Shown in pieces: positions 7,721 through 26,354 of a stretch of DNA of 50,367 bases (positions are counted from its first letter, which is position 1; the number at the start of each line of letters is the position of its first letter). Position numbers and translations under genes: made by a program. This DNA is from Schmidtea nova. Taxonomy: Eukaryota. The notes beneath the pieces are model-generated. The model had not been told where the DNA came from. It saw nothing but the letters and a program-made list of their open reading frames with translations, and searched no databases. Location of the stretch: contig CM097883.1 of the NCBI GenBank assembly GCA_044892505.1, positions 391,468,234 through 391,518,600 on the forward strand, written 5' to 3'.

Positions 7721-8338
7721 ATTAAAGTTAAAAAAAAAAATTATCAAATTGAAGCAAAAATGAAAATTTTACTCAGTAAAGTCGTTTATTATTTTTCAAA
7801 AAATTCCTCTGTTTCCCTCCCTCGAATGCCAATTTCCTACCCCTTATACAACATTCTGATAACCACAATATTGCGCTACTTTGTCAAATTAAACTTTACA
7901 ATTACCTAAAAAATTAAACTACAAATCAACAATAAACTATAAAAAATTAGTAAACTACATATTAGAAATATTTTATTCGTTATTTTCTAATTGAGTACTA
8001 CCTCTTTAAACATTAATATCAAACTGCAAACCCGCACCATACTTTTATCAAAACTAATGTAAGATAAAATAAAGGAAATCCCCTGCAGTTATGTGTCACA
8101 CAATTTGTTGTATAACATACAACATTTTGTTGAATCAAGGTAAATTAAATTCGGCTACAAAAAGTTTGCGTAAAGATAGAGTCAGTAGTTTTTAGAACTT
8201 ATTTTTAATAAATTAAAAGTTCTGCGCAGGAGTTTGAGAAATGGTTACTAAATTTGGAAACCATTTTGTTTCAAATGTTTAGTGTTAAAATGTCAAAATT
8301 GAGTAGGTAGATGTGTGGAGCCGGGAACAAAGACATTA

Positions 8339-8500
8339 TGACTCATGCGTGGGCGGAAAAAAAAGAACAAAGACCCCCCCCTCCCCCCGGGGGGGGGTAG
8401 AAATTTTTTTTTTTGGTGAGTCATCGATGAGTCATCGATGACTCATCGATGAGTCATACTTTTTTTTTTGATGAGTCATCGATGAGTCATCGATGAGTCA
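8339..8500 (+). promoter_or_regulatory. Array of AP-1/TRE-type sites in the left TIR (11-bp unit TGASTCATCGA)
   Basis: TGA(C/G)TCA at 8339, 8417, 8428, 8439, 8450, 8472, 8483 and 8494. Function is inferred from the motif only. Confidence 0.6.
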
Positions 8501-8523
8501 TAATTTTTTTTTTCAAAAATTTT

Positions 8524-8726
8524 TTTCGCGCCAAATTTTTTTTTTCAAAAATTTTTTTTCGCGCCAAATTTTTTTTTCAAAAATTTTTTTTCGCGCCAAA
8601 TTTTTTTTTCAAAAATTTTTTTCGCGCCAAATTTGTTTTTCAAAAATTTTTTTCGCGCCAAATTTTTTTTTTCAAAAATTTTTTTCGGGCCAAATTTTTT
8701 TTTTCAAAAATTTTTTTCGCGCCAAA
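8524..8726 (+). promoter_or_regulatory. Tandem array of 7 E2F-type sites (TTTCGCGCCAAA) in ~32-bp T/A-tract units, left TIR
   Basis: Six perfect copies plus one CGGGCC variant. The 12-mer matches the overlapping double E2F site of mammalian DHFR promoters. Confidence 0.65.
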
Positions 8727-9184
8727 TTTTTTTTTCAAAAATTTTTTTAATTAGTCCAAATTTTTTTTTACTAATTTTTAAAGACGAATTTTTTTTAAGA
8801 TAAATTATTTTTAGTCAAATTTTTTTTTAAAAACAAAATTCGAGTAATCAAAAATATTTACAACAGGTGTGCAAACAAAGACATTTTTTTTATGTGTGCA
8901 TGTTTAATTAATTATTATTTGTCAAGTATGAAGCTTTTGCACTTCAAAACCATCACAGAAGAGGTTCTGCTTCCAGGGTTCTGATCGCAATGTTCTGCTT
9001 CCAGGGTTCTGATACTAAATGTTCTGCTACATTTAATTATTATTTTTTCAAACTAAAGACATTGCAACACGCGTGCAACATGAACAAAGACATTGCAATA
9101 CACATGCAAACTAAACAAAGACACATGCGTGCAACACATAAACAAAGACATTAAAAAGACAAAATTTATTTATAAATATATCGT

Positions 9185-9950
9185 NNNNNNNNNNNNNNNN
9201 NNNNNNNNNNNNNNNNNNNNNNNNNNNNNNNNNNNNNNNNNNNNNNNNNNNNNNNNNNNNNNNNNNNNNNNNNNNNNNNNNNNNNNNNNNNNNNNNNNNN
9301 NNNNNNNNNNNNNNNNNNNNNNNNNNNNNNNNNNNNNNNNNNNNNNNNNNNNNNNNNNNNNNNNNNNNNNNNNNNNNNNNNNNNNNNNNNNNNNNNNNNN
9401 NNNNNNNNNNNNNNNNNNNNNNNNNNNNNNNNNNNNNNNNNNNNNNNNNNNNNNNNNNNNNNNNNNNNNNNNNNNNNNNNNNNNNNNNNNNNNNNNNNNN
9501 NNNNNNNNNNNNNNNNNNNNNNNNNNNNNNNNNNNNNNNNNNNNNNNNNNNNNNNNNNNNNNNNNNNNNNNNNNNNNNNNNNNNNNNNNNNNNNNNNNNN
9601 NNNNNNNNNNNNNNNNNNNNNNNNNNNNNNNNNNNNNNNNNNNNNNNNNNNNNNNNNNNNNNNNNNNNNNNNNNNNNNNNNNNNNNNNNNNNNNNNNNNN
9701 NNNNNNNNNNNNNNNNNNNNNNNNNNNNNNNNNNNNNNNNNNNNNNNNNNNNNNNNNNNNNNNNNNNNNNNNNNNNNNNNNNNNNNNNNNNNNNNNNNNN
9801 NNNNNNNNNNNNNNNNNNNNNNNNNNNNNNNNNNNNNNNNNNNNNNNNNNNNNNNNNNNNNNNNNNNNNNNNNNNNNNNNNNNNNNNNNNNNNNNNNNNN
9901 NNNNNNNNNNNNNNNNNNNNNNNNNNNNNNNNNNNNNNNNNNNNNNNNNN
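9185..9950. other. Assembly gap inside the Polinton (other gaps: 3530-3890, 5901-6355, 30339-30467, 36865-37653, 39436-39628)
   Basis: Runs of N. Confidence 1.
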
Positions 9951-10166
9951 TATTAATAATAATATTAATAATAATAATAATAATACTATAAATCAAAATA
10001 ATAAAACACTTAATAAAACATATAATAATAACTTATAATAACTTATAAAAATAACTTATCAAAAAGAAAAAAACTAATAAAAATAACTTATAAAATATTA
10101 ACAAAAAAAAAATAATAATTTCTTAGTTTTAATTGATTGCGCAATTTATTACAATCAAAATGTAAT

Positions 10167-10182
10167 GGCCCTAAAGAGGACC
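10167..10182 (-). terminator. Histone-mRNA-type 3' stem-loop 2 (GGTCCT-CTTT-AGGGCC) downstream of polB
   Basis: 6-bp stem and 4-nt loop with histone-like flanks (AAC...ATTACA). An AATAAA follows on the same strand at 10150-10145. Confidence 0.6.
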
Positions 10183-10436
10183 GTTAATTCGTTCACATTC
10201 TGATTCGGCTTTCTGAATATTTTCATCATTTGTTTCTGTGTATTTTCCTCATTTGTTTCGTATGATTTTTAATCATTTGTTTCGGATTATTTGTTTCTGA
10301 ATATTTTCATCAACATTTCTTTCTCTTTATTTTTATCAATTGTTTTGGATTATTTTCATCATTTGTTTCTGTAATCTTTTTTTTTCTTCATCTGTAAGCT
10401 AAAATTTAGTAATATTTGTTTACAATCATAAATTGT

Positions 10437-10452
10437 GGCCCTGAAGAGGGCC
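10437..10452 (-). terminator. Histone-mRNA-type 3' stem-loop 1 (GGCCCT-CTTC-AGGGCC) 143 nt after the polB stop
   Basis: Fits the GGYYYT-YTYN-ARRRCC consensus and is followed by ACAA, in sense orientation to polB. Confidence 0.65.
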
Positions 10453-10594
10453 GATTGTTCATTCTCATATCTTTTTTTTTTTTTTTGGTTTTTTGATTTT
10501 CTTTTTTTTTTTTTTGGTTTTTGATTTTCTTTTTCTGGTTTTTTAACTTTTTTTTTCCATTTCATTCTTATCATCTTTCTCCTTGCCATCATAA

Positions 10595-10658
10595 TCATGC
10601 GAAATAATCCCGAGCCGTCGGGTCATAGAAAGCGTAGGGGTCATCTTGTTGTTGAAGC

Positions 10659-10692
<34 letters not shown>

Positions 10693-13600
10693 CTTGGACA
10701 TCCCTATCACCTACAAATATAGTGGTGTCACCCCCCATATAATGACCATACGCCAAACTTTTATTTTTTTCCACCCAGTTCCTCTTATCGTCCCTACAAG
10801 ATAAAGCCCTCTTATTACTTTTAATACTGAAAAGTTGGTGGTTTTTCGAAGTAATGCGGAACTGGGGGACATTGTATATCTTATCATTAAGGTAACAGTC
10901 AAGATAAGATTGATGTGTGAGACCTGCATCTTTCAAACAGATCCCCTTGGCTTTCATGCAGGCCTCGTCTCCCATAAGACTATAGCACTTAGGTCTCAAG
11001 AAAACCCACTCATCATACAGTAGACCCTTATTCTCATCCTTAAATTTGCCAATCACAGAATCTAGGGTCCTACTATACAATGTATGACGAGTGTCGTAAT
11101 TAGAGGTATCCAAAAGCCTATCTCGAATCATGGCGGTCAAAAGGGTGTTAAGATCAAGATGTTTGATTTCCAAGAAGAAGGAATCAGTATCCCCAGCAAC
11201 GATGTTAATTTCGCAGTTGAAGTCGTTACGATATTTTTGTAACTCTTCATACTGCAGCTGGTACATACGAAGTTTGGATAAATCCAGTACGGTTTGTCCA
11301 ATGTAGCTGGGTCTATCCAAACATACTGATTCCTTCTGAAGCAATACGGAGATGAGATCATTGTCGATTTTTGTAGTTTTTTTGAAATTAGCTTTTGACG
11401 TGTAAGTCAGCAGTTTTTGTGCCGAGTTACACAGTCGTAAATTTATGCGTTTTTTTAAGTTCTCTACGGTTTTGCCGTAGAGACTATTATTTAATAATTT
11501 GTAAAAATTTTTATCGAGCTTGTTGGTAGCAGCCGCTCGTAAACTGGTGTTTATGTTTATGTAATTAAAAAATATTTTTTCTTGCTTAAATTTAATAGCC
11601 CTGTGGACTTTAGTTACAATTACACCGATTTTTATAAATAGTTGCAGAAGCCGCCAATGAAGAACATAATTCTTCTTTGGAAGATGCGTTAGCAACAGCT
11701 TCTCAACCTTGGATCCCGGTGCACACATCTTTTCAGCGGCAACTGGAAGATCATCCAGTTTGTCGTGAATCGATGCCGGAATTTCCAAATCCACTTCTAT
11801 GGTGTAACCATAATGAAGTGTATCGAGATTTCCCGATGTGCACTCACAAACGATTTGATTTAATAATTGGTCATCAGTGACCCACTCAAAATTACCACAA
11901 GGAAGGGGTTGGCTTAAGGCCCACCCGTATAAATTATTTATGTCAATATATAGTAATGCGGTATCCGGGCTCGTCTTGACATAATGTTTATTGACAAACG
12001 TTAGTCCGCCGCGAATACCGCCCTCGAAAAAGTTATACATCTCCATATCGGTGAGGAGCTCGATAGGAGAGTCAAGTGTTAATAAAGCGGAACTCCACGA
12101 CATGCCGGGAATTCCGAGAAAATTTAAAGGCTCAAGCCTGTTATGGTTAATTGATTTTAATCGAAATTGCTGAAAATAATCAGCTAACAAAAACACATCC
12201 AATTTTAAATAAACCATCATGTAATCGTACAGTGATGTACATGATGTTTCTTGCCAGATTTTATGGGCAGCAGCATACTCGACAGCAGTTATATCTTTCC
12301 ATTTCGGGGGTAAACACAAGGTTGATTTTAAAACTTCTAAAGAAGTGGCAGCGTCGTAAGGAAAAATGCCCTTGGCAGTGACTATAGTGCCTCGAAATTC
12401 AGATTGTGTTAATGGTAAGCTAGTGAGTGTTTTTACTTCGTTATTTAGAGACTCACTTACAAACTGATAAGAGTCAATAAATTTTACGGTCAGGCTATCG
12501 ATGTACGCGAAAAGGCTAAGAAACTTTTCACTTGTCAAGGGTATACAACTAATATTCCAACTGTTGTATTTTGAAAGACCATATTTTAAAATATGGTGTA
12601 AATCGTAACCCTTCAAGTTATGAAAGATTACGGGCAAAGAGTGTCGTATTTGCCGTGACTTGTTACACTCTGAGCAGGCTGCTCCAATATAAAGACCGGT
12701 GAAATGGTCGTGATCCCTAACAGGTGCCACTAAAAGTTTTTTGCATAAATAACAATTAGTGCTATTATCAAATTGTCGCTGTTGGGTCGCAGTGATAGTC
12801 ATGCGTTTTTGATAATTTTTATAGTAATAGGGTGTCACTATATACCGACTGATTGACTCAATTTCTCTTAAGAATTGATCAACACAGTCTAACCCTACAA
12901 AAGATTTGTAAATTCTCACCCCAGAAAAGTTGTTAATGAGAAGGAGACCTGCGGCAATAGGAAGATGTTTTTGGTGGTGAACAGTGTCTTTCGGTAATAT
13001 TGCCTCGAAATCCGCATATATTACAAAAGGAGGAGTTACTGTTTTTTTCCAATCAGTAAACTCCAAAAATTTATTTTTGGGTAATGTGTACAGTGTGGTA
13101 CCCAACTGATTTTTGTTACAAAGACCCTTATGACGATTAAAGGCTTCGTCGTTCCTAAACCCATTCAAGCAACGAGGGCACCATTGACTACAAATCCTAA
13201 CTGGGGTGATTGTGCTGTTTCGGCAATTCAAAAAGCGATTCAGATCGGTAATCGCAAGATAATGAAAATTATCTTTTTTCTCCAAGAGAAGCAAATTTAT
13301 GGGAATAGCCCCGACTACTTTACTACGGTAGACTATATCGATAAAGGGGTGTTTAAGGACGACATTATCATCATTGTCGTTGTCGCTTATATCAATTTGG
13401 GCCTTTTCGTCATATGTAAGGACATTTATACTATAGCCACTGTTTTGTCTTTCAAATTTTTTAATATTTACTAATTTCATGGGCATGTCGTTGGGGTCAA
13501 AAACAAGTTGGGAAATGTCATAAGAAGTAGTCCTATGCCTGTATTGGCGTTCAATACTATTGTATTTAACTACTGCTAAAAAGCTATATAAAAAGCAATA

Positions 13601-14221
13601 GGTGTCATTATTTTGTACATTAACTAAACAACTTAAATTTTTTAAGGTATTCGGCGTTTCGATATAACTGCTGCCGCTCAATCGACTAATTTCAGAAAAT
13701 TTAGTCACTAAAAAACTAATATATTCGATTTTGGAGATTGTCCAATTACTCCCCTTTTCGTTAATCTGGACAATCTTCTCATTTAAATTAGTGACACCTT
13801 CCTCAATAAAGGTATCACTCCACTCTCTGGCAGAATTTGAGATGACGAAAGATTGTAGTTGATCATCTTTCTCAAATTCTACCTTGAGACAAAATTGAAT
13901 TTTTACAGATTTTAAATTAATAATATAAGATTTTAGTTTTTCTAATAATATATCCGGCACAGAGACCGTTTTTAATAATAAATTAGATACATCCATTTTT
14001 ATAATAAAATGGGTATCGTTCAAGTCGGAAGTAACTTCAACAATACCCATTCCAATTTGATTATTATTATTATTTAAAATATTAACATAATCGTCAAATT
14101 CATCATCATTGACGATTATGTCATCGGCGGATATAATACTGATATTAGTACTTTTATTATAAATAAGATCATCCTCATCATCACTGATGAGGGATATAAT
14201 ATTATTATTATTATTATTAAT

Positions 14222-14284
<63 letters not shown>

Positions 14285-14823
14285 ATTTTCATCTTCATCA
14301 TCGCTGATGTCGATTATTATAATTTTTTTAGGAACTGAATCCATTAATGTTTGGTTTTTTCTTTTATTTATATTTGATGTATTGATTTTATTTGTATTTT
14401 GTATATTATTTGTTTTAATAGTATTTTGTAATTTATTTGTATCAATAGTATTTTGTAATTTATTTGTATCAATAGTATTTTGTAAATTATTTGTATTAAT
14501 AGTATTTGTTGTATTATTATTATTATTTGTATTTATATTATTTGTTGTTTTATTTCTAATAGGAGTATTTGATAAATTATTAGTTTTATTCGAAATATAA
14601 TTTTTATATAACGAATTAAAAAGTGATTTTTTAGATGGTTGGTATTGGGAAAGGTGTGACCTATGAAAGATATAAAATTCCCTATAAGAAGTAGTTTCAA
14701 TAATTTTACATTTAGGGCATAGGAGGTGGGTGACACCATTATATTTATATGAATAATACTTTTCCATAATGACATGACAGTCACTATGGAAAGTATTATT
14801 GCAAAAATTTTGGTATATTGAGC
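10595..14823 (-). CDS. polB: Protein-primed family B DNA polymerase (pPolB), main exon; ATG-only ORF 10595-14767, 1390 aa
   Basis: Exo I YADFE, Exo II FHNLKGYD, Exo III YLKLD, Pol A YIDINNLYG, Pol B KLLNNSLYGK, Pol C GDTDS, and KAKG. Also an EndoVII-like RDHDHFTG..CSECN insert and an OTU-like DTYCF...HY region. The frame stays open upstream to a CAG acceptor at 14826-14824. Confidence 0.97.
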
Positions 14824-15870
14824 CTGAATATTGAAAAAAAAAATTAAAATCAAAGGCTACAATTATAAAATTAAAATATTATGAGTAAAAATTAAAATAT
14901 TATTAGTAAAAATAAATATTTCAAATAAGAGATTATTACCTATTAAGTTAATGATTAATATATTTTTATAACAAAAAAAAAATTAATATTTTGATAAATA
15001 TTTAAAATAATAGTTAATTGTTAAAAAATAAACATTTACCTATTATTTTAAATATAATCAAAAGTTTTATATATATATATTATTTTTAAAACCTAATCAT
15101 AAAAAATAATATTATTTTTATATCATTATAAAATCATCATTAAAATATTAAAAATTGTTCATCAATATAATATATTCTTCATAAAAAATTTCAGCATAAT
15201 AATATCATCTTCGTCATAAAAAAAAATTGAGCGTAATAATATCATCTTCATCATAATAAAAAAAAATTGAACATCATCATATCATCTTCTTCATAATAAA
15301 AAAATTGAACATCATCATATAATCGTTTTTTTTTTTTTGTCATAAAAAATTTCAACTACATATTTTTTATTCATAAAAATAATTTTATATATATATTAAA
15401 AATAATAAAAAAATATTAGCATAAATATATAAAAAATAATATTATTAATTTCATATAAATTCAACATTATTTCATCATAAAAAATTTGAGCATTATTATA
15501 TCATCTTCATCAAAAGAAAAAATTGAACATCTTCATATAATATTTTTTTTTATCATAAAAATTTTAACATTATATTTTTTTCTTCATAAAAAAATTTATC
15601 TTTTTCTTCATAATAAACATTTCTTTTCATTTCAAATTCATAATATCATAATTTTTTTCTTCATAATAAAAATATATCTTTTTTATTTTCATTTCAAATT
15701 CATAATATCATATTTTTTTTTCTTCATAATAAACATTTATTTTCTTCATAAAAATAATTTTATCATAAAAAATTAATTAATTTATTTAAAAATATTCCCA
15801 TAGGAATTAATTAAAAATAATAAAAATATTATTATTATTATCATATACAAAAATAAAAATAAAAAATTAC

Positions 15871-16257
15871 ATTTGCCAGAGTTTTTTCCAATAAAACTCT
15901 GCATATTGGACCATCCGTTATAAGCATCATTAATCGGGACATCGTTACTCGGCATATTGGTACTCGAGACATCGAAATTCAGGACATCATTATCATCACC
16001 ATCATCATTAATCGAGGCATCTATATCAACAACATTTCCTAAAAAATTGAATAATAAAGAAAATAATAATTTAATAATATTAATTTTACTATTTAATCTG
16101 TTTTGATTTTGGATTCTTAACGATGTTCCTACCATATTGTTGGATAAATTAACACCTAGAAATAATATATTATAAATATAATAAAATAAAAATTAATAAT
16201 TTTACTTTTTAGACCTCCGGCGATCCTTGTTGGTAAATTAATATTTAAATTTTGCAT
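15871..16257 (-). CDS. Three upstream coding exons (16257-16206, 16155-16090, 16038-15871), probably the 5' exons of polB
   Basis: GT-AG introns of 50 nt (16205-16156) and 51 nt (16089-16039), all phase 1. A donor at 15870 is phase-compatible with the polB acceptor (T+GC = Cys), giving a 4515-nt frame (1504 aa + stop). Confidence 0.6.
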
Positions 16258-16476: not shown

Positions 16477-16615
16477 TGACATGTGATTATCACGCATTGA
16501 TCACGCACTGGTCATGCCTTTGTGATGAAAATAATAATATTTATAATTAATAATAATAAAAATAATAATTAATAAAAATAATAATAAAAATAATAATAAA
16601 AATAATAAAATACAT

Positions 16616-17427: not shown

Positions 17428-17467
17428 AATAATAATAATAAAAATAATAACTTTGATCATTTATACT

Positions 17468-17538: not shown

Positions 17539-18753
17539 CAGTATTGTTCGATTGGCAGTAATTTGAACTTCATTTTCAAAAACTCCATAAATAACTACAT
17601 GAACCGGTTCATCAATAGGTTTTGCAAACTTTATATCCAGTCGTAAATTTCCGTTTTGAGGGATTTGGCTTTGATTCAAATCAAAATCGGGAGCCAGAAC
17701 AAATGTAAAGAATGGATAACTAGATTTAAATTCATCTAGACCAATACCACAATTCAAGTTTTTATCCAAATAACCTAGATTTCGGACAAGACTTTGCATA
17801 TATGATGCACTAAAATTATCATTTTCAAAATCCTGGGTATATGTTTCACGATAATCGGTATTTTTCGACAATGTTAATGAAGTCACATTAAAGTGTTTGA
17901 ATGTAGATGTTGACTCAGTATAAGACCCATTATATTGATTTTCGGATTGAAAAGCCACAAGAATGAAATTAGGCATTCGTCTATCTCCAAATATTTGCTC
18001 CTTGTAAAATGACGATGCCCCTTTACCGATAGCAAACGATACGATTTCTTTGGATTTTAATGGATAAATTGCATGTTTTTTATTTAAACCAATTTGATGA
18101 CCGGCCAATACTGAAGAATCACATCGAACTCTTCTTACCATTAATTTTGCATCAACTATTTGGATAACTGGTTTTCCAGCTACCGATTTCAATGATAATG
18201 CAGAATCAGATCGCTTCAATCTAATATGTACATTAACTCCGGGAAGTAAGTATTTAGGTTGATCCATAAAATCCAGTTGTAATGACGAACACATGTTGAA
18301 AAGTTTAGATCCTTTAATCCATTTTTTTCGATCGTCAGCTGAACCATATCCCATTGGAGTAAGACATGTTTCTTTAGCATCATTCGTATAATTTAAAATA
18401 GTTTCGATTATTGCCTTGTGTGCATATGTATTGTTTCCACCCTCGATTTTTATATTATTAAATCCGAGAATTACATCTTTGAAAAGTGTATGAAACAGGT
18501 AATTATTAGGAACTACATCACTCGCATCGGCTAGAGCTTTTTTATCTTTATCTACAACTTTGATTGTAACGGACAATAATGTATCGTTCAAATCCAAATA
18601 TTCGGTTTGAGAACCATTAATGTAAAATTCAACATCATTTCTACTATCTGTAATTGAATTCATTGGAAACACATCTTCAAACGCCCCATATTCAATAACT
18701 GCTTGAGGTGATGGTCGATCAAAAAGACATAATTCAGATTTACCGCAAATCAT
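17533..18753 (-). CDS. Major capsid protein (double jelly-roll, Polinton PY), 406 aa
   Basis: CGKSELCLF..P..IE, VEFYI.G..EYLDL..T.L, LDFMDQPKYLLPGV and GNLRLDIKF are typical Polinton MCP motifs. Confidence 0.93.
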   Translation of the reverse strand: MICGKSELCLFDRPSPQAVIEYGAFEDVFPMNSITDSRNDVEFYINGSQTEYLDLNDTLLSVTIKVVDKDKKALADASDVVPNNYLFHTLFKDVILGFNNIKIEGGNNTYAHKAIIETILNYTNDAKETCLTPMGYGSADDRKKWIKGSKLFNMCSSLQLDFMDQPKYLLPGVNVHIRLKRSDSALSLKSVAGKPVIQIVDAKLMVRRVRCDSSVLAGHQIGLNKKHAIYPLKSKEIVSFAIGKGASSFYKEQIFGDRRMPNFILVAFQSENQYNGSYTESTSTFKHFNVTSLTLSKNTDYRETYTQDFENDNFSASYMQSLVRNLGYLDKNLNCGIGLDEFKSSYPFFTFVLAPDFDLNQSQIPQNGNLRLDIKFAKPIDEPVHVVIYGVFENEVQITANRTILV

Positions 18754-19133
18754 TCTTCAAATATAGTTCCATGACCTTTCATTCGTTTGTTTATACGCTT
18801 TCGTTTACGTCTTGGTCCTACCGGTACAGATTCCGGTTCCTTATTTTTTGTAAACATACTTGTAATTGTAGGAAGCATTTGTGTTACAGCAGGTATAGCT
18901 TTATTAACTGCGGCCAAAGCATTGGTTTTCAATGACGGTAATATTTTATTATCTTTCATGATAACGTCCTTGGCAGTATTCATTCCGAAATTACCTAGTC
19001 GTCTAAGAATTGGAAGTGCAAATCTCCCAATAGTTTTCAACCAACCTGATCCATACTGTTTACCGACAAAATACGGTAATTCGCCACCAGTTTGGCTATC
19101 ACTGTACATTGAAACTATATCGGGATTACTCAT
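18750..19133 (-). CDS. Putative virion core/membrane-lytic precursor protein, 127 aa
   Basis: QTGG and QYGSG glycine motifs, then an amphipathic WLKTIGRFALPILRRLG helix and a basic RRKRKR tail. Lies between mCP and MCP with overlapping start/stop codons. Confidence 0.7.
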   Translation of the reverse strand: MSNPDIVSMYSDSQTGGELPYFVGKQYGSGWLKTIGRFALPILRRLGNFGMNTAKDVIMKDNKILPSLKTNALAAVNKAIPAVTQMLPTITSMFTKNKEPESVPVGPRRKRKRINKRMKGHGTIFEE

Positions 19134-20169
19134 CGTTTTTTCGAAAATGTAGAGTTAAGTGAGTTTTTGAATCTTTTGGAAATTTTATAAATCTTCCACT
19201 GTCATCCCGGATATTTATTTCTATATTGTTTATACAGGATGTTGAAACAGGTAAATACATTGGATTTTCAACTTGTATTTGAACAATTTCATCTGGCTCG
19301 TATTTTTCAATCCATATAGATTTTAGTAAAGGAACCAAGGAATCACCAACAATAATGGGTTCGATAATGTTTGTATATACGAATAATTGCTGATGAAGTT
19401 TAGATATTTTCGGTTGACGAACACCAGAAATAATATTTTTATCGGTAAATGTATCCTTATCTAATCCCAATGTATTGACCAAGTATTTATCAAATCTGAC
19501 TTTATTGATTTTTTCTTTGAGTTTGAATTTAAACAATTTATTTAATTCGACAACTGTAAAAATATCCGAACAATTATCGCTAATATATTTCTGTAATTCA
19601 TCTAGATGCGTTATATACAACTCCTCCTTGAAGGTGAATACATGTCCTTCTTGACGATCATACGATATTTTAAAAGTAATTATTTCTTCATCGTTACTGG
19701 CCAAGTTTTGCATAACTTTGAATTCACATTCTTCTTCATTACATATCATTGTCAGTTTATTACTTCCCATTCGTTTTGCTACATCAAGATCGTTAAATGT
19801 AATTGTATACGGAACAACATTACACGTGAGAATTATTCTTCCACTTCGTTGCCACATTTCGATATCCGGATCAATTGTGTGAGTTGGAACATTCAGAAGG
19901 CCACTATTATTATATATCGAGAAAAATGCATTTGCAACAGTTGTTTTCGTAATATAGTAATATATTTTACAATAACTATAATATGGAAAAGGATGGTAAA
20001 CAAATGTAAAATCCATTAGAGCAACTTCCCAATTTCCGTTTAAATAAATAGGATTAGGTAAATTCACCATGAATTTACTTGCGGTATTATCTGGATGGAT
20101 ATTCGGACAACTATTACTCGGTAAAATAGTGTAAAAATTCACTTTACTAGATTTTTTGACGAGATCCAT
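19126..20169 (-). CDS. Minor capsid protein (penton, Polinton PX), 347 aa
   Basis: FYTILPSNS..PDNT..F.V.LP.PI.L.G.WEVAL and LFVYTNIIEP..VGD..VPLL..Y.PV..IEINIRD. Confidence 0.92.
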   Translation of the reverse strand: MDLVKKSSKVNFYTILPSNSCPNIHPDNTASKFMVNLPNPIYLNGNWEVALMDFTFVYHPFPYYSYCKIYYYITKTTVANAFFSIYNNSGLLNVPTHTIDPDIEMWQRSGRIILTCNVVPYTITFNDLDVAKRMGSNKLTMICNEEECEFKVMQNLASNDEEIITFKISYDRQEGHVFTFKEELYITHLDELQKYISDNCSDIFTVVELNKLFKFKLKEKINKVRFDKYLVNTLGLDKDTFTDKNIISGVRQPKISKLHQQLFVYTNIIEPIIVGDSLVPLLKSIWIEKYEPDEIVQIQVENPMYLPVSTSCINNIEINIRDDSGRFIKFPKDSKTHLTLHFRKNDE

Positions 20170-21183
20170 GATGGTTCTTTATATCCATGCCATTTGACAT
20201 AGTATTGTTTATCCTTACCCACCATTTTAGTCTTCAAAATCTTTTGAATTCTAAATATCGTAGGTTTAGGAATAACTTGTAATTCTTGTTCGTAGAATTT
20301 GCCGCTGATTATATTGTTATCAGAGTCACGAATAGTATACATGACAGGATTCTGCACTGTGTTGACTTTCGATATTTGATATACCTCATCACTCCAATTA
20401 TTATCAAAATTTTTAACGAATGGCGATGTACTAATCTTGCTAATTCGAACATGATCATCAACTTTATATTTTGGTTTCTTTACTTTCACTTCACTCACAA
20501 TATTTTCAGTATCAACTACTTCTGCCGGTTTCCTACCATTTATACCCCGATGAGCACTATGATTATAACTATGAATCAATTGAGGTAAGACATTAATCCA
20601 GGTTTTATTGCCTTTAAAAACAAAGTATTTTTTCAATCGATCACGCAAAGTTCGATTAAGTCTCTCGACATGAGCGGCTTTGAATTGTGAGAATACCGAA
20701 TAATGATTTATTCCCTTGATAACTTCCTTGACTTTACTGTTGTAAAACTCCTTTCCTAAAAAATATTAAATTTATAAATTTAAATTAAAATTTACCCAAA
20801 TCGGTTTGTAAATTAGTTGGCCGATCCTTTTTCATCATTGTCTTGATAGCAATTGCCATATCATTAGCAGATTTTGATTTTACTCCAATTGCTCGAGCAA
20901 ATCTACTGTAAACATCAATACACGTTAAAATATACTTGTACCCCTTGTTAATTTTGGAATACGGAATCATTTCCATCAAGTCCATTTGCCACAAATCATT
21001 GATTCTATATGTTTTATATGCTCGAGTTGGAAACCGTTTCAACATCGGCTTGTTTAGACTGTATGCAAGTTGCCCCGATAACCAACTTTGTGTCTGTTGT
21101 TTCGACTTCTGTGCTTTTTTCCTTAGCTTTTCGACTCCACCGAAACCGGCGTCGTCTTTTGGGTTCGTCCAGATCTTCTCCAT
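20139..21183 (-). CDS. int: Retroviral-type (rve) DDE integrase with C-terminal chromodomain, 2 exons (21183-20796, 20755-20139), 334 aa
   Basis: WQMDL, QTDLG|KEF and VERLNRT form D-D-E once the 40-nt GT-AG intron 20795-20756 is removed. Total 1005 nt in frame. YYVKWHGY..SW chromodomain. Confidence 0.95.
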
Positions 21184-21238: not shown

Positions 21239-21748
21239 TTATGACTTTCTTTTTCCCAATAAACCAGCACCTCCCAATAAAGATAATGCTAATGGTAACA
21301 ATGCTGCGATAAAACCACCTTGTTGTTTATATATTACTTTGCGCATAAGTTTTTTATTTTTTGAGTTTACTAGCGACAACAATGGTTTTTTATGTTTGTT
21401 CAAAACACGGCGATTAGATGGAGTTAGATTTATTTTACCTCGCACGACTTTAATTAAAATAGAGAGTAAATCATCGATGACGTAACTAGGAAACGATTGA
21501 AGAATACCCATTCTTCTAACGGAAGGGGCTTTAAGTAATGCATTAAAAAACGGTAAACTACGATGATGTGTTTGTTTAGCATTAGATTTCAAATTATTTT
21601 TGGGAATATTATCCATAAGTATTTTCTTGGATTTCTTTCTTGATTTCTTTATAGATTTCTTTGTAAATAGTTTCTTTGTTTTCTTTCCCGCTTTCTTTGT
21701 TCTAGCCTTTATCAATGGCTCAAACTTTACTCGAGATTTCATTAACAT
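21239..21748 (-). CDS. Putative basic DNA-binding core protein precursor, 169 aa
   Basis: Lys/Arg-rich N-terminus. C-terminal QQGG-FIAALLPLALSLLGG hydrophobic segment with protease-site-like GG motifs. Confidence 0.7.
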   Translation of the reverse strand: MLMKSRVKFEPLIKARTKKAGKKTKKLFTKKSIKKSRKKSKKILMDNIPKNNLKSNAKQTHHRSLPFFNALLKAPSVRRMGILQSFPSYVIDDLLSILIKVVRGKINLTPSNRRVLNKHKKPLLSLVNSKNKKLMRKVIYKQQGGFIAALLPLALSLLGGAGLLGKRKS

Positions 21749-21768: not shown

Positions 21769-22392
21769 TTAACTTTGTTTATAAACCATGGCTCCTTCAG
21801 GGTTAAAAATATCGGTTCTAACCCGTAAATCATCACTACATTGTTGAGTAAAATCAAGGAAAATATATCCATGAGGAGATTTTGTAGCATCTTGAAAGGC
21901 TTCAATCAAAAAGTTACGATTAGAAGGATAAGCTTGTCTTGCCAGAAAATCAATAACTGTTGCATCTCTAGGATTTTTAAAAACAACAAGATATTGAACA
22001 TTTAAATTACGAGTTCGATGACTACCGCCCTGATGAAATAAATTCTGAGTTATAAAAATAACAGTAACACCTTTATGTCTACTGATTTTCGTAAATAAGT
22101 TATTGAAATCCTTTTCTTTATTTGCTTCTTGATACAAGTCGTCAATGATAATCACATCACCATGTTTTAATCTAGATGACCAGTTTTTATCGAAACCTTT
22201 AATGATTGTCATTTTTATTTTACAAAACTGATCTTGTGTCATTCCACTTTCGTCGTCAGCACCCCTATGCCAATAAATATTATTAAATTTTGACTTGAAT
22301 AATTTCGATTGCAATAATTTACAAACAAATAAAGTTTTTCCACTCCCGCTCGGACCAACAATTTGAAACACTGCATCATTTCTTAATTCCAT
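21769..22392 (-). CDS. FtsK/HerA-superfamily (A32-like) genome-packaging ATPase, 207 aa
   Basis: Walker A GPSGSGKT, Walker B IIIDD, SRH..VIFITQNLF and N.QYLVVFKNPRD. Confidence 0.95.
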   Translation of the reverse strand: MELRNDAVFQIVGPSGSGKTLFVCKLLQSKLFKSKFNNIYWHRGADDESGMTQDQFCKIKMTIIKGFDKNWSSRLKHGDVIIIDDLYQEANKEKDFNNLFTKISRHKGVTVIFITQNLFHQGGSHRTRNLNVQYLVVFKNPRDATVIDFLARQAYPSNRNFLIEAFQDATKSPHGYIFLDFTQQCSDDLRVRTDIFNPEGAMVYKQS

Positions 22393-22485: not shown

Positions 22486-22953
22486 ATGATTAGAAACATT
22501 AATTACAAAGGTAAGACAGATGTATCACACATGAAATTTCCAAATGGAAAACCCCAGCAAATTGTAGATCGAAGTGGAAAATACCCAATAATATACTTTA
22601 AATCAGGAAGATATAGAATAATGGGATGCAGGGAATTTATTAGTGACGAACAAGTTGAGTTTTACGATTTAAAGATACAATCGATAACTGTAACTGCGGA
22701 TTTAGGATTTATTTGTAATTTGAATGAATTATCGAAATTAATACCATGTGTTTACGAGCCAGAATTATTTCCAGCTTTGAGATATATCAAATATAATCCC
22801 ATGTGTGTAAATATATTTGCAAGCGGGAAATTAGTCATATTAGGATTAAAAAACAAAGACTATAGTACTATAGTTGATGATATTATTTACGATATAAAAT
22901 CAATTATAGAAGATAAAGCCTTTATTGATTTCATACTAACATGTGACTCATGA
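22486..22953 (+). CDS. TATA-box-binding protein (TBP)-like protein, 155 aa
   Basis: Two TBP repeats: RNIN..IIYFKSGRYRIMGC and KIQSIT..DLGF..L..L..YEPELFPALRY..NIFASGKLVILGLK, compared with canonical YEPELFPGLIY..LIFVSGKVVLTGAK. Confidence 0.88.
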   Translation: MIRNINYKGKTDVSHMKFPNGKPQQIVDRSGKYPIIYFKSGRYRIMGCREFISDEQVEFYDLKIQSITVTADLGFICNLNELSKLIPCVYEPELFPALRYIKYNPMCVNIFASGKLVILGLKNKDYSTIVDDIIYDIKSIIEDKAFIDFILTCDS

Positions 22954-23128
22954 CTGCAATATCGATGCATTAGAAATGCACGATTCTGATTGGCTCTGTG
23001 TGTATCGATAGAATAAAGACATGTTGTGCATGCTTCATTCTGATTGGTTCATTATGTATGTTTCAAATCATGTGTGTTTCTTTGATATATATACTATGAA
23101 CAATCTCACATAGTTTATATTCACAATA

Positions 23129-23792
23129 ATGTCTCTTACGCAAACACTAATTAAAAGCCGTAAGGATTTTTAATTATTTATTTATTAAAATTAATATTAT
23201 TTCTTTTTTAGAAAAGTTGATGAACGTTATTTACAGAAAGCTTGAGGAACTGTTCCCAAATCTTATGCCAGCTCTGGTCTATACGGCTCCTGAGATGTTC
23301 CCGTACAAGATAATGGTCTTGACGGGAATCGACATCAATCAGATTGTGCTCGATCACATGACGAGCCAGAATACTGATCTTCCAAGGGTACCCGAGCACA
23401 TTATCTGTGCGTACCAATGCGGGAGCTGCGTGGAACGCATTCGTCAATTTAATATTTGGGTTTTGCGAAACTCATTGAGATTATACGAAGTCCAGCAAAT
23501 GGACAAAATCGATGAGGAAAAGGAAGATGATGAACAAGTCAAGGAAACATGGCCGAACTCGACTCCGGAACCGAATGATGATGAAGATGATCAATCAAAA
23601 AATGATTGCTCAATGGAACATGCACCATCTCTAGATGGTCCGTATCCATCGAAATCACCTGATTGTTCAGAATCTCCACATTCACCCGATTGTGCCGAAT
23701 GCCATCGACAGGCTGATGGTGTTGATAATGATGATGAAGAAGAAGAAGAAGAACAAGAAGAAGAAGAAGTAAAAGAAAACGATGAACAATAA
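23129..23792 (+). CDS. Hypothetical protein with acidic C-terminal tail, 2 exons (23129-23159, 23212-23792), 203 aa
   Basis: The ORF-track start is a TTG just after a TTTTTAG acceptor. A 52-nt GTAAGG..TTAG intron restores an ATG start in phase (612 nt). GC content is raised, and CCAAT and TATA-like elements lie upstream. Confidence 0.7.
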
Positions 23793-24290
23793 TCTGATGT
23801 GTATGTGTGTGTTTAATGTAATTAGTTTTTTTCTTTTAGTTATGTTATTTTAGTTTAATAAAAGTTTATTTATTTATTTTAGTTTTTTTATTCATTTTAG
23901 TTTTTGTTTTCATTTAAATAATAGTAATAGTTTTATTTTTTTTTTTTTTTATTAAAACATTTTAAGTAGTAGTTTTTTAATTAACTGTATATAAAAGTTA
24001 AAAAAAAAAAATTTTTTATTAAATACTTTTCAGAAAGAAAGTAGTAGTAGTAGTATTATAAAATAAATAAGAACATTAGGAACAGAACCTATTCTGTGTT
24101 GGTTTTGATATGCAAAAAGCTTCATACTAAACATATACTAATTAATTAAACATGCACGCATACAACAAAAATATTGCAATACATGTGCATACTGTGTGCA
24201 AAACAAATGCATGAATATGATTGGACAAAGACATCCAGTAATCAGTATAAATACAAAGACATTTTATAAAATATTGTCACAATTTACAAC

Positions 24291-24707
24291 ATGCAATCAC
24301 GAAAAGAAAATCTAGATATAAGCGAAGAAAAAATATATCAGACTGAGGTAAAACCAGTTCAGATGTACTATGACAGCCGACTTTATTTTTTGGTTAATGA
24401 AATACCGTATCGATTATCATTTCCGGTAAAGTTAACAAAATCTTTATATGACAGTCTTGCTATAATTATTTCCAAAGCAGATATTATCGCATTAAATCGA
24501 TTATTTTCAAAGATCAATGTTAATTTGACATGTAAAGAAACAATGTACATCAATAACCGAAAAACTCGGTTTCATGATGCTTTTCAGACTATTGATTTCA
24601 TGGATCAAGAACACTGGTTCGTTACAGTTATTATTCAAGGGTACAAGATTGATAAAAAAGATGTTGTTACTCCGATTTGGAGAGTTGACAATGCAAGATA
24701 CGCATAA
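24291..24707 (+). CDS. Hypothetical Polinton protein, 138 aa
   Basis: Clean ATG ORF with TATAAA at 24246-24251, an ATTGG box upstream and AATAAA ~10 nt after the stop. Confidence 0.7.
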   Translation: MQSRKENLDISEEKIYQTEVKPVQMYYDSRLYFLVNEIPYRLSFPVKLTKSLYDSLAIIISKADIIALNRLFSKINVNLTCKETMYINNRKTRFHDAFQTIDFMDQEHWFVTVIIQGYKIDKKDVVTPIWRVDNARYA

Positions 24708-24771
24708 TTGTTTTTTAATAAATATTTTAGTATGAACAAATTTAGTTTTTATATTAGTTTTTGTTTTTAAA

Positions 24772-25353
24772 ATGAAATTAATTATAGTTATTTTATTATT
24801 ATGTGTTGACAATACTGAAGGAGAACAAGCTTTGGAGGATTGTCAATCATCACATCCGTTTCGAAAACAAGATAGTACTTGCGCGAGTTATAACGATATA
24901 TGTCTTTACTCAAACATTGAATGCAATCAAATTAAATTACAATGTAATCAATGTCCTTCCAAAAATAATGTGATTAATAATGATATTGAAAAAATGATTA
25001 ACAAAATAATTATGAAAATAGTTGAACGATTAAAATGTATAAATCAAACTATTGTTAAAAAAGAATATGAAGTCAGATACCAAAATCAAACAGTTGAAAA
25101 CGAAAAAACATCAATTGTTTTACATTATATAAGTTTATTTATATTAATAATAATACTGATGTTATCGGCATCCATACGGCTGGAGAAGATTTCAAATATT
25201 CCAAAGAATAATATTCCGACAAATACTAGTATTCCGATGAATAATATTACAATGAATAATATTCCGATGAATAATATTCCGAGTAACAATTCAGATGTAA
25301 ATAATTTTGAAACTAAATTTTGTACACGTACACAACGATATATTTATAAATAA
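24772..25353 (+). CDS. Type-I membrane protein with signal peptide and 6-Cys ectodomain (TNFR-CRD-like), 193 aa
   Basis: Hydrophobic N-terminus, C-x12-C-x6-C-x6-C-x6-C-x2-C, two NQT sequons, TM segment ISLFILIIILMLSASI and an NNIPMNN-repeat tail. Confidence 0.7.
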   Translation: MKLIIVILLLCVDNTEGEQALEDCQSSHPFRKQDSTCASYNDICLYSNIECNQIKLQCNQCPSKNNVINNDIEKMINKIIMKIVERLKCINQTIVKKEYEVRYQNQTVENEKTSIVLHYISLFILIIILMLSASIRLEKISNIPKNNIPTNTSIPMNNITMNNIPMNNIPSNNSDVNNFETKFCTRTQRYIYK

Positions 25354-26354
25354 ATTTTGTCTTTTTTAATGTCTTTGTTTATGTTGAACGCATGTGTCTT
25401 TGTTTAGTTTGCATGTGTATTGCAATGTCTTTGTTCATGTTGCACGCGTGTTGCAATGTCTTTGTTCATGTTGCACGCGTGTTGCAAAGTCCTTGCACGT
25501 GTGTTGCAATGTCTTTGTTAACTTGCACGCATGTTGCAAAGTCATTAGTTTGAAAAAATAATAATTAAATGTAGCAGAACATTTAGTATCAGAACCCTGG
25601 AAGCAGAACATTGCGATCAGAACCCTGGAAGCAGAACCTCTTCTGTGATGGTTTTGAAGTGCAAAAGCTTCATACTTGACAAATAATAATTAATTAAACA
25701 TGCACACATAAAAAAAATGTCTTTGTTTGCACACCTGTTGTAAATATTTTTGATTACTCGAATTTTGTCTTTAAAAAAATAATTTGACTAAAAATAATTT
25801 ATCTTAAAAAAAATTCGTCTTTAAAAATTAGTAAAAAAAAATTTGACCTAAAAAAAAAAATTTTTGAAAAAAAAATTTGTAAAAAAAATTTTTGAAAAAA
25901 AAAATTTGGCGCGAAAAAAATTTTTGAAAAAAAAATTTGGCGCGAAAAAAAATTTTTGAAAAAAAAATTTGGCGCGAAAAAAAATTTTTGAAAAAAAAAA
26001 TTTGGCGCGAAAAAAAATTTTTGAAAAAAAAATTTGGCGCGAAAAAAATTTTTGAAAAAAAAAATTTGGCGCGAAAAAAAATTTTTGAAAAAAAAATTTG
26101 GCGCGAAAAAAATTTTTGAAAAAAAAAATTATGACTCATCGATGACTCATCGATGAGTCATCAAAAAAAAAGTATGACTCATCGATGACTCTTCGATGAC
26201 TCATCGATGACTCATCGATGACTCATCGATGACTCATCAAAAAAAAAAAATTTTCTACCCCCCCCCGGGGGGGAGGGGGGGTCTTTGTTCTTTTTTTTTC
26301 CGCCCACGCATGAGTCATAATGTCTTTGTTCCCGGCTCCACACATCTACCTACT
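25335..26354 (-). repeat. Right terminal inverted repeat of the Polinton (at least 1020 bp)
   Basis: Mirror of 8302-9184. Contains 7 TTTGGCGCGAAA copies (25905-26108), 9 perfect TGASTCA sites (26132-26317) and extra TTGCA/CTTTGTT subrepeats (25410-25545). Confidence 0.95.

What the first reader, a model, noticed from the sequence alone, without database searches (positions are those of the whole stretch)
8302..26354. Integrated hypothesis: a Polinton built to couple to host S phase (E2F/AP-1 termini, histone-type polB 3' end, own TBP)
Three independently observed features point the same way: E2F-site arrays at both ends, SLBP-type hairpins on the polymerase mRNA, and a captured TBP. CRE and CCAAT elements at the polB promoter and a TATCGATA (DRE-like) at 23003 add weaker support. 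Together they suggest a latent provirus that senses proliferating or wound-activated cells through host factors, then switches to a TBP-like-driven late programme. The model is inference; each component is visible in the sequence.
Basis: inference. Interest (0 to 1): 0.85.

Follow-up and report, generated by a model that had tools for sequence, protein, structure and literature searches.

The report
Near-intact Polinton with host-type regulatory signals
This is an almost intact 18-kb virus-like transposon (Polinton/Maverick) that carries its own small TATA-binding protein, has two histone-type RNA hairpins just after its DNA polymerase gene, and has arrays of E2F-like and AP-1-like sites in its end repeats; this fits the idea that it times itself to host DNA replication, but does not prove it.

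Summary
All the described features are in the sequence. The element (8302-26354) has a 6-bp target duplication, inverted end repeats of about 0.9-1 kb and a full Polinton gene set. Only the integrase is broken, once. Each end repeat holds 6-7 exact TTTCGCGCCAAA units and 8-9 TGASTCA sites, far above chance. Two hairpins 142 and 412 nt after the polB stop, on the polB sense strand, match Rfam Histone3 just below threshold. Each matches the C. elegans histone hairpin at 15 of 16 positions. The TBP-like gene folds as a compact TBP saddle. It belongs to an old family of about 150-residue proteins and is present in both relatives examined, so it is not a recent capture. The single CRE and TATCGATA are at chance level.

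The unifying S-phase model is only partly supported. In two relatives (polB 55-60% identical) the TBP-like gene is present. The E2F/AP-1 arrays are absent. No hairpin follows polB; the same hairpin module occurs once, beside a non-histone ORF in flanking DNA. The end arrays lie downstream of the terminal genes, not upstream. The assembly gap lies in non-coding DNA and affects none of these features. The histone-type 3' module on a viral polymerase gene is the most novel item. The host is unidentified, possibly a nematode.

The parts
8296..8301 (.). Target-site duplication AAATTG, left copy
   Evidence: Read; same hexamer at 26355-26360.
8302..9164 (+). Left terminal inverted repeat
   Evidence: about 90% gapped identity to the right arm. 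Its first 45 nt also align with the ends of a relative.
8417..8501 (.). 11-bp tandem array with TGASTCA (AP-1/bZIP-like) sites; one more site at 8339
8505..8748 (.). 32-bp tandem array, 7 units with TTTCGCGCCAAA (E2F-like on both strands)
9050..9161 (.). Inner repeats carrying ACAAAGACA and CACGCGTG-type palindromes; the same motifs recur in internal promoter-like regions
9185..9950 (.). Assembly gap (unread; not filled, not looked up)
   Evidence: It lies in non-coding DNA between the left repeat and the polB 3' region.
10142..10187 (-). Histone-type hairpin module 2 (hairpin 10167-10182), followed 16 nt later by AATAAA
   Evidence: Rfam Histone3 21.5 bits.
10412..10457 (-). Histone-type hairpin module 1 (hairpin 10437-10452), 142 nt after the polB stop; first 3'-end-like signal after the stop
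   Evidence: Rfam Histone3 31.5 bits, E 4.9e-7; fold z-score -3.8; 15/16 match to the C. elegans histone hairpin.
10595..14767 (-). Protein-primed family B DNA polymerase, intact 1390 codons, with an Asn-rich N-terminal region and an endonuclease VII-like zinc module
   Evidence: Exo and Pol motifs read. More than 4000 homologues, many carrying PF03175. Weak PF02945 hit.
15782..16135 (-). Small ORF (117 codons) of unknown function upstream of polB
   Evidence: no homologue in the two relatives.
16330..16530 (-). Promoter-like module: TGACGTCA (16440), CTGATTGG (16361), TATA-like box
16616..17017 (-). Conserved Cys-rich ORF (133 codons)
   Evidence: Homologues in both relatives.
17050..17409 (-). 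Adenain-like cysteine protease
   Evidence: Pfam Peptidase_C5 26.7 bits against a cut-off of 21.3; His and Cys motifs read.
17533..18753 (-). Major capsid protein, double jelly-roll
   Evidence: AlphaFold model pLDDT 92.7. Foldseek top hits are the iridovirus, PBCV-1, mavirus and Sputnik major capsid proteins, E 1e-15 to 1e-12.
18750..19133 (-). Small basic-tailed virion-type ORF (127 codons)
   Evidence: 54-63% identical to genes at the same place in the relatives.
19126..20169 (-). 347-codon ORF at the minor-capsid position (function inferred from position only)
   Evidence: 31-38% identical to relatives' genes; three tandem paralogues in L002.
20139..21183 (-). Retroviral-type integrase with chromodomain; the reading frame is interrupted once
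   Evidence: Pfam rve and Chromo. It matches the uninterrupted integrase of L002 in two frames.
21239..21748 (-). Basic 169-codon ORF (core-protein-like, inferred)
21769..22392 (-). Packaging ATPase (A32/FtsK type)
   Evidence: Pfam Pox_A32 29.5 bits; 71-75% identical to relatives.
22486..22953 (+). Compact TBP-like protein (155 codons): shortened first repeat, full second repeat
   Evidence: Pfam TBP; family alignment A1; model pLDDT 92.5; Foldseek hits are all TBPs; family profile against PDB TBPs E 1e-28.
22954..23110 (+). Promoter-like module: two CTGATTGG, TATCGATA, TATA box
23217..23792 (+). 191-codon ORF with Cys cluster and acidic tail
   Evidence: no family hit.
24130..24290 (+). Promoter-like module: GATTGG, two ACAAAGACA, TATAAATA
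24291..24707 (+). 138-codon ORF, conserved in one relative
   Evidence: 32% identity to L001 5271-5642.
24772..25353 (+). 193-codon ORF with a hydrophobic N-terminus, a Cys-rich part and a hydrophobic segment (small membrane protein, inferred)
25355..26354 (-). Right terminal inverted repeat, with an E2F-like array (25853-26127) and an AP-1-like array (26131-26238)
26355..26360 (.). Target-site duplication AAATTG, right copy

Best explanation
Shown: this is a young, almost intact Polinton/Maverick of the adintovirus-like kind, 18,053 bp long, inserted with a 6-bp duplication into an AT-rich animal-like genome. It encodes a protein-primed polymerase, integrase (broken once), packaging ATPase, double jelly-roll capsid protein, adenain-type protease and a lineage-conserved compact TBP paralogue.

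Shown: its non-coding DNA is built from signals that look like host signals. These are end-repeat arrays of exact bZIP/AP-1-type and E2F-type sites, internal CCAAT-plus-TATA promoter modules, and two copies of a roughly 50-nt histone-type 3' hairpin module directly after polB on its sense strand.

Inferred, most likely working:
- The polymerase transcript is cut or stabilised at the hairpin by the host's histone stem-loop pathway (SLBP, called CDL-1 in nematodes). Polymerase would then be made when histone mRNAs are, that is, in S phase.
- The end arrays act as platforms for host factors, as distal enhancers or as helpers of the terminal replication origin. They would not be gene-proximal promoters, because the terminal genes run towards them.
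- The TBP-like protein acts on the element's own TATA-bearing promoters.

The hairpin step is the best supported of the three. The arrays are a recent, lineage-specific elaboration. The three features have not been shown to form one designed unit.
For: Element identity rests.

Hairpins:
- Rfam Histone3 scores both, on the polB strand only.
- None is expected by chance.
- The stem, the C-first loop and the ACA flank match the C. elegans histone hairpin printed in PMC1924863.
- Module 2 is followed by AATAAA, as in C. elegans histone genes.
- No AATAAA lies between the polB stop and module 1.
- The two copies differ by one stem change that keeps pairing (G-C to G-U). They are more alike in the hairpin than in the 5' flank.
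- The same module with the same flanks occurs in another genome (L003), so it is a conserved functional unit rather than a chance palindrome.

Arrays:
- The counts are far above chance.
- The bZIP-like 10-mer is also present once at the same sub-terminal place in a relative.

TBP-like protein:
- The fold is confident and the matches are to TBPs.
- Three of the four positions that hold the DNA-kinking phenylalanines in TBP are invariant Phe in 39 family members.
- The gene is present in both relatives.
- TATA-like boxes lie in three internal promoter-like modules.
Against: - There are no expression data. Whether polB transcripts end at the hairpins is unknown, and AATAAA signals lie downstream of both.
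- Both hairpins score below Rfam's gathering threshold.
- No hairpin follows polB in the two relatives. The third copy of the module lies outside the relative's element, next to a non-histone ORF.
- E2F-like and AP-1-like arrays are absent from the relative whose ends are visible.
- The arrays are tandem copies of one unit, so the counts are not independent. A GC-only hexamer between a T run and an A run reads as an E2F site in 12 of 64 cases. Similar T-run/CGCGCC/A-run arrays occur in unrelated contigs.
- The host, and whether it has E2F, SLBP and AP-1 factors, is not identified.
Confidence: 0.4

Rival explanations
1. The end-repeat arrays are fast-evolving satellite expansions of short terminal motifs, or binding sites for the element's own integrase or replication proteins. 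Their likeness to E2F and AP-1 sites would then be coincidental, and they would not sense the host cell cycle.
For: - Each array is one unit copied 7-9 times.
- The arrays are missing in the relative with visible ends, which has a different 18-bp array at the same place.
- The bZIP-like 10-mer exists as a single sub-terminal copy in that relative, so the window's array looks like an amplification of a terminal recognition motif.
- The chance of an E2F-like reading, given a GC core between T and A runs, is about 19%.
- The arrays lie downstream of the nearest genes on both sides.
Against: - Two different arrays both match well-known proliferation or stress factor sites exactly. The per-unit chance is about 8e-4 and 1e-3 before allowing for the many motifs one could have recognised.
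- The 12-mer reads as an E2F site on both strands.
- Array copy number and unit sequence are kept in both arms.
Confidence: 0.35
2. The two hairpin modules are passengers: a duplicated piece of host-type histone 3' sequence, or of another mobile element, that landed in the repeat-rich DNA after polB. The polB mRNA would ignore them and be polyadenylated.
For: - They are not present after polB in the relatives.
- The same module sits in flanking DNA of a relative beside an unrelated ORF.
- The region is full of tandem repeats.
- AATAAA motifs lie at 10326-10331 and 10145-10150 on the polB strand.
- polB is inverted relative to both relatives, so this 3' region is a recent arrangement.
Against: - Both copies are in the polB sense orientation.
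- Module 1 is the first 3'-end-like signal after the stop.
- After duplication the hairpin stayed paired and better conserved than its flanks.
Confidence: 0.3
3. The TBP-like protein is not a switch for a late programme. It would instead be a general helper or a competitor of host TBP (for example a decoy or a shut-off factor), unrelated to S-phase sensing.
For: - It shares a 93-bp divergent intergenic region with the ATPase-capsid block, so it may be co-expressed with those genes rather than ahead of them.
- Its first repeat is shortened, and one of the four Phe positions is not Phe.
- Nothing in the sequence ties TBP to the cell cycle.
Against: - Strong conservation of the DNA-facing residues points to real DNA binding.
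- TATA-like boxes are present in the element's own promoter-like modules.
Confidence: 0.3

Closest known systems
Polintons/Mavericks and adintoviruses (Starrett et al. 2021, PMC8502044; nematode Polintons, PMC10748475)
   Same: Protein-primed PolB, rve integrase with chromodomain, A32-type ATPase, double jelly-roll capsid protein, adenain-like protease, roughly 1-kb inverted end repeats and a 6-bp target duplication. A relative also carries a Bcl-2 homologue, as reported for adintoviruses.
   Different: The literature found here mentions TBP genes only in figure legends of Starrett et al.. The nematode Polinton paper mentions neither TBP nor histone signals. No paper in the library links SLBP with Polintons. 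Here polB is inverted relative to the two closest relatives.
Replication-dependent histone mRNA 3' end (Rfam RF00032; C. elegans type, PMC1924863)
   Same: 6-bp GC-rich stem, 4-nt loop beginning with C, ACA 3' flank, A-rich 5' flank, and an AATAAA shortly after (module 2).
   Different: It follows a viral polymerase gene, not a histone gene. It lies 142 nt rather than a few tens of nt after the stop. It is present in two copies. Its conserved downstream element (TGATTGTA) is not the AATCC element of C. elegans. It scores below Rfam's threshold.
E2F-dependent early promoters of small DNA viruses (adenovirus E2 early unit, which encodes the viral polymerase; parvovirus early promoter); from established knowledge, no sequence was fetched
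   Same: Paired or palindromic E2F-type sites in a virus that needs S-phase conditions. Adenoviruses are distant relatives of Polintons.
   Different: Here the sites form arrays of 7 inside the end repeats, downstream of the nearest genes, and are not conserved in a relative. No Rb-binding LxCxE protein was found above chance.
Cellular TBP and TBP-related factors; TBP-like genes of large DNA viruses and of some midsize linear dsDNA viruses
   Same: TBP fold over both repeats. The second repeat has the YEPELFP and FxSGK motifs.
   Different: It has about 150 residues instead of a core of about 180. The first repeat lacks its first helix. It is only 31-36% identical to cellular TBPs and forms its own family (58 hits).

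Membership tests
Polinton/Maverick | Protein-primed family B DNA polymerase | tested here: met
   Exo I-III and Pol A-C motifs read; homologues carry PF03175. The window protein itself gave no Pfam or PDB polymerase hit by sequence.
Polinton/Maverick | Retroviral-type (rve) integrase | tested here: met
   Pfam rve 34.7 bits against a cut-off of 32.6 and a weak Chromo hit. The reading frame is interrupted once.
Polinton/Maverick | Terminal inverted repeats and 5-8 bp target-site duplication | tested here: met
Polinton/Maverick | Double jelly-roll major capsid protein, packaging ATPase, adenain-like protease | tested here: met
Histone 3' stem-loop (RF00032) | Score at or above the family's gathering threshold | tested here: not met
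   31.5 and 21.5 bits against 34.
Histone 3' stem-loop (RF00032) | 6-bp stem, 4-nt loop, conserved flanks; likeness to a real histone hairpin | tested here: met
   15 of 16 hairpin positions match the C. elegans histone hairpin shown in PMC1924863.
Histone 3' stem-loop (RF00032) | Lies in the 3' UTR of a replication-dependent histone gene | tested here: not met
   It follows polB in the window and a non-histone 162-codon ORF in L003.
Histone 3' stem-loop (RF00032) | Bound by SLBP and defines the mRNA 3' end | not testable with these tools
   No transcript or binding data; host unknown.
E2F-regulated cis-element | Match to the E2F consensus | tested here: met
   30 TTTSSCGC matches in the window, 26 of them in the two arrays, read on both strands of each unit.
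E2F-regulated cis-element | Placed in a promoter and conserved in relatives | tested here: not met
   The arrays lie 3' of the terminal genes. There are 0 and 1 matches in the relatives. The ends of L002 were not all in hand.
E2F-regulated cis-element | Occupied by E2F/DP in the host | not testable with these tools
   Host not identified.
TBP family (PF00352) | Pfam score above gathering; two-repeat saddle fold | tested here: met
   51.3 bits against 22.9. The Foldseek top 44 hits are all TBPs, with alignments of 164-178 columns. The first repeat is shortened.
TBP family (PF00352) | Four DNA-kinking phenylalanines | tested here: inconclusive
   F38, F95 and F111 are invariant. The fourth position, in repeat 1, is not Phe.
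TBP family (PF00352) | Binds TATA DNA and TFIIA/TFIIB | not tested
   No complex was modelled.

The most novel reading that the evidence does not exclude
A lineage of animal Polintons has taken over the host's replication-dependent histone mRNA 3'-end pathway for its own DNA polymerase gene, and has multiplied E2F-type sites in its end repeats. Replication proteins would then appear only in S phase. This would be the first virus-like element known to use a histone-type, SLBP-dependent mRNA end.
Probability: 0.25. Interest if true: 0.8.

Novelty: new variant of a known kind. Interest (0 to 1): 0.55.

Why it matters
How Polintons and adintoviruses are regulated is almost unknown; they have been studied mainly through their protein genes. 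If the hairpins really end the polymerase mRNA, this would be a new way for a DNA element to tie itself to the host cell cycle. It would also be a rare case of a non-histone gene using the histone 3'-end pathway, and a handle for finding when and where such elements are active using ordinary expression data. The conserved compact TBP defines a viral transcription factor family that has only been mentioned in passing. The negative co-occurrence result also cautions against reading design into tandem arrays.

Tried and rejected
- The Rfam scan of the whole window at gathering level gave nothing.
- The polymerase gave no polymerase hit by sequence in Pfam or the PDB. Its identity rests on motifs and homologues.
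- An exact look-up of the window's TBP-like protein found it is not on record, so other copies in this genome could not be compared.
- Host identification through the flanking hAT fragment failed. The best named hits are GTF2IRD2-like genes of bees, spiders, scorpions and a microsporidian, a pattern of horizontal spread that names no host. Other flanking ORFs gave only hAT hits.
- Literature searches for the exact 12-mer and the exact hairpin found nothing.
- A metagenome scan for the hairpin plus its downstream element found nothing.
- A metagenome scan for paired TTTCGCGCCAAA found 96 stretches of DNA. None encodes a relative of any protein of the element.
- A covariance model of the hairpin module found no further copies in the window or the relatives.
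- An LxCxE (Rb-binding) motif search gave one match, at chance level, with no acidic or CK2 context.
- I first thought the hairpin-bearing ORF in L003 belonged to the relative's element, which would have made the module a positional feature of the lineage. I rejected this once the relative's ends were located by alignment to the window's terminus.
- I first thought the protease was split. I rejected this because the 119-codon ORF holds both the His and the Cys motif, and the next ORF is a separate gene conserved in the relatives.

Full report
GAP FIRST. The unread stretch 9185-9950 lies between the inner end of the left terminal repeat and the DNA downstream of polB. The polB stop is 644 nt from it. 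The only ORFs that cross it are made of unread letters. The right arm of the repeat ends at about 25355, which corresponds to about 9164 on the left. The left arm is therefore complete before the gap. The same hexamer, AAATTG, flanks both ends (8296-8301 and 26355-26360; chance about 8e-4). This supports the order and orientation of the scaffold join. Everything from 9951 to 30338 is continuous sequence. None of the three features depends on reading across the gap. What the gap could hide is a further hairpin copy, the true end of the polB transcript, or a small gene. I did not look it up or infer its letters.

WHAT THE ELEMENT IS. 8302-26354 is a Polinton/Maverick. On the minus strand it holds:
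- an intact 1390-codon protein-primed PolB, with exonuclease and polymerase motifs read, more than 4000 homologues, many with PF03175, and an endonuclease VII-like zinc module;
- a 117-codon ORF;
- a Cys-rich ORF;
- an adenain-type protease;
- a 406-codon protein that folds as a double jelly-roll major capsid protein (pLDDT 92.7; Foldseek E about 1e-15 to the PBCV-1, iridovirus, mavirus and Sputnik capsid proteins);
- two smaller virion-type ORFs;
- an rve integrase with chromodomain;
- a basic ORF;
- an A32-type ATPase.

On the plus strand it holds the TBP-like gene and three ORFs of unknown function. Compared with the two relatives, every gene is full length except the integrase, whose frame is interrupted once. 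The element looks young.

HOST. The host is not identified. The genome is AT-rich (29% G+C). The flanks hold hAT fragments whose named relatives are spread over arthropods and a microsporidian. One relative carries a Bcl-2 gene, which points to animals. The hairpin type (below) and TTTTCAG-like acceptors just before two start codons hint at a nematode. This is inference only.

END REPEATS. Each arm is a mosaic.
- The first 45 nt carry ACAAAGAC and one TGACTCA.
- Next comes a C/G run.
- Next comes an 11-bp array with 7-8 TGASTCA sites.
- Next comes a 32-bp array with 7 units of TTTCGCGCCAAA.
- Next comes a 28-bp repeat.
- Last come inner repeats with ACAAAGACA and CACGCGTG-type palindromes.

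The counts are far above shuffles: 14 against 0.2 for the 12-mer and 23 against 4.2 for the heptamer. They are copies of one unit each, so the real question is how likely one unit is to carry such a site. That chance is about 8e-4 for the E2F 8-mer in a 32-nt unit and about 1e-3 for the heptamer in an 11-nt unit. Given a GC hexamer between a T run and an A run, it is 12 in 64. Allowing for the many motifs a reader could have recognised, the double match is suggestive, not decisive. Position argues against ordinary promoter function. On the left the nearest gene (polB) runs towards the repeat, and on the right the last two ORFs do the same.

HAIRPINS. On the polB sense strand there are two hairpins with 6-bp stems and 4-nt loops, 142 nt and 412 nt after the stop (none expected by chance).
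- Rfam Histone3 scores them 31.5 bits (E 4.9e-7 in that search) and 21.5 bits, against a gathering score of 34. There is no match on the other strand.
- The hairpins read GGCCCT-CTTC-AGGGCC and GGTCCT-CTTT-AGGGCC. The C. elegans histone 3' UTRs printed in the supplement of PMC1924863 read GGCCCT-CTTT-AGGGCC followed by ACA. That paper stresses that the loop there is CTTT or CTTA and that an AATAAA follows.
- So each hairpin here matches at 15 of 16 positions. The first loop base is C. Module 1 has the ACA flank. Module 2 has AATAAA 16 nt downstream.
- No AATAAA lies between the polB stop and module 1.
- The two modules are duplicates of a unit of about 60 nt. The hairpin differs at 2 of 16 positions, and the one difference that falls in the stem keeps pairing. 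The 5' flank differs at 5 of 16.
- A covariance model of the module finds no other copy in the window.

RELATIVES. The closest proteins in the public collections are only about 60% identical and come from metagenome assemblies. I looked up two contigs:
- ERZ25039515 contig_33250 (L001 and L003; polB 57%, TBP-like 47%);
- ERZ2272806 NODE_2 (L002; polB 55-60%, TBP-like 53%).

Both share the whole gene set, and both have the TBP-like gene next to the ATPase end of the capsid block. In both, polB points the other way from the window. Neither has a hairpin after polB. Neither has E2F-like or AP-1-like arrays (0 and 1 TTTSSCGC; 2, 1 and 0 TGASTCA). For L002 the ends were not all in hand.

The relative's ends could be placed by alignment with the window's first 45 nt. 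They carry ACAAAGAC and a single copy of the same bZIP-like 10-mer that is amplified in the window. They are followed by a different 18-bp array. The heptamer may therefore be an old terminal recognition motif, either for a host factor or for the element's own proteins.

L003 does hold one Histone3-like hit (23.9 bits). It has the same upstream and downstream flanks as the window's module 1. However, it lies about 380 bp outside that element, 16 nt after the stop of a 162-codon non-histone ORF. The simplest reading is that this module of about 50 nt is the standard histone-type 3' signal of the host group, and that the window's element has acquired it. It is not a conserved feature of the Polinton lineage.

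TBP-LIKE GENE. The 155-codon ORF matches Pfam TBP.
- It has 58 homologues. About 40 form a tight family of 144-160 residues, while cellular TBPs appear only at 31-36% identity.
- In the alignment of 39 members the second repeat keeps the YEPELFP and FxSGK motifs. The first repeat is shortened but keeps its FxSG strand. F38, F95 and F111 are invariant. In the profile alignment to a solved TBP, F95 and F111 fall on the two phenylalanines of that repeat.
- The model is confident (pLDDT 92.5). All 44 significant PDB matches are TBPs, aligned over 164-178 columns.
- It is therefore an old, constrained viral TBP paralogue, not a recent capture.
- Starrett et al. list 'TBP' among genes of some midsize linear dsDNA viruses, in figure legends only.
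- Three internal regions combine CTGATTGG or GATTGG, ACAAAGACA-type motifs and a TATA-like box upstream of ORFs. CTGATTGG occurs 6 times against 0.83 expected.
- The gene shares a 93-bp divergent intergenic region with the ATPase-capsid block, so a role as an early switch is not indicated.

WEAKER ITEMS. There is one exact TGACGTCA and two TATCGATA. Both are at chance level on their own. The CRE/CCAAT/TATA module sits about 200 nt upstream of the 117-codon ORF and 1.6 kb from polB. It could serve polB only if the two are one transcription unit, which is inference.

VERDICT. The hairpins give real, specific support to a link with the histone/S-phase pathway. The arrays are compatible with it but are lineage-specific and could be satellites or self-recognition sites. 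The TBP-like gene is real but has no demonstrated link to the cell cycle. Closer relatives were not available.

1. I made three look-ups of metagenome contigs that encode relatives. Once one of them showed a Bcl-2 gene, which suggests an animal host, I made no further look-ups. I used the three loci only for gene tables, motif counts and short alignments.
2. The two metagenome pattern scans targeted cis-motifs. None of the returned loci encodes a relative of the element.
3. Possible slips:
In my private working I also recalled histone-hairpin and related consensus strings from memory. The comparisons that carry weight use tool-supplied data (the Rfam model and the supplement of PMC1924863).
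   - The table printed shows match bounds that bracket the integrase interruption, and in my working I looked at where the integrase ORFs end. I do not repeat those places here.
4. Model R1 is a search profile of a 59-nt non-coding module. Nothing was derived from it.

Noticed in passing
window 17405-17560 (minus strand): Three 26-nt repeats, each a strong palindrome, straddle the stop of the major capsid gene. The RNA fold is -42.5 kcal/mol, z-score -5.6. This is a second, different hairpin array at a gene's 3' end.
   Followed up: partly
window 10595-14767 (polB, N-terminal third): There is a long Asn-rich low-complexity region. It has two stretches of hydrophobic residues followed by Ser/Asp/Glu runs (SUMO-interaction-like), plus an endonuclease VII-like zinc module between the exonuclease motifs. 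The non-histone ORF beside the hairpin in L003 has a similar hydrophobic-acidic stretch.
   Followed up: no
window 10595-14767 against L002 393-3968 and L003 5403-7811: polB is on the same strand as the capsid genes in the window, but it converges on them in both relatives. The polB segment is therefore inverted in one of the lineages.
   Followed up: partly
L002 12382-12759 and 6945-9969: The relative carries a Bcl-2 family gene next to its TBP-like gene. It also has three tandem paralogues of the window's 347-codon ORF.
   Followed up: no
L003 1925-2474: A 162-codon non-histone ORF in DNA flanking the relative ends 16 nt before a histone-type hairpin. This may be a second case of a non-histone gene with this signal.
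   Followed up: partly
L004-L099 (for example L008, L040, L051, L087): Pairs or arrays of TTTCGCGCCAAA occur in 96 unrelated metagenome contigs. Some are AT-rich with the same T-run/CGCGCC/A-run build. One (L040) has TTTGAA directly after each site. One group of about 30 contigs shares a 33-nt spacing.
   Followed up: partly
window 4348-5676 and 27149-27586 (minus strand): There are two hAT transposase fragments of the GTF2IRD2-like kind. Partial matches reach 82-87% identity to spider and scorpion genes, and there is a hit in a microsporidian, which suggests horizontal spread.
   Followed up: partly
window 8347-8355 and 26301-26309: An exact GCGTGGGCG (EGR/Zif268-type 9-mer) lies next to the terminal TGACTCA in both arms. 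These are the only two in the window. It is not conserved in the relative.
   Followed up: no
window 14768-15781: One kilobase of 16% G+C tandem repeats (units of 21-63 nt) lies between the 117-codon ORF and the polB start.
   Followed up: no
window 3530-3890, 5901-6355, 30339-30467, 36865-37653, 39436-39628: There are five further assembly gaps in the window. Long 'ORFs' listed across them are artefacts of unread letters.
   Followed up: yes
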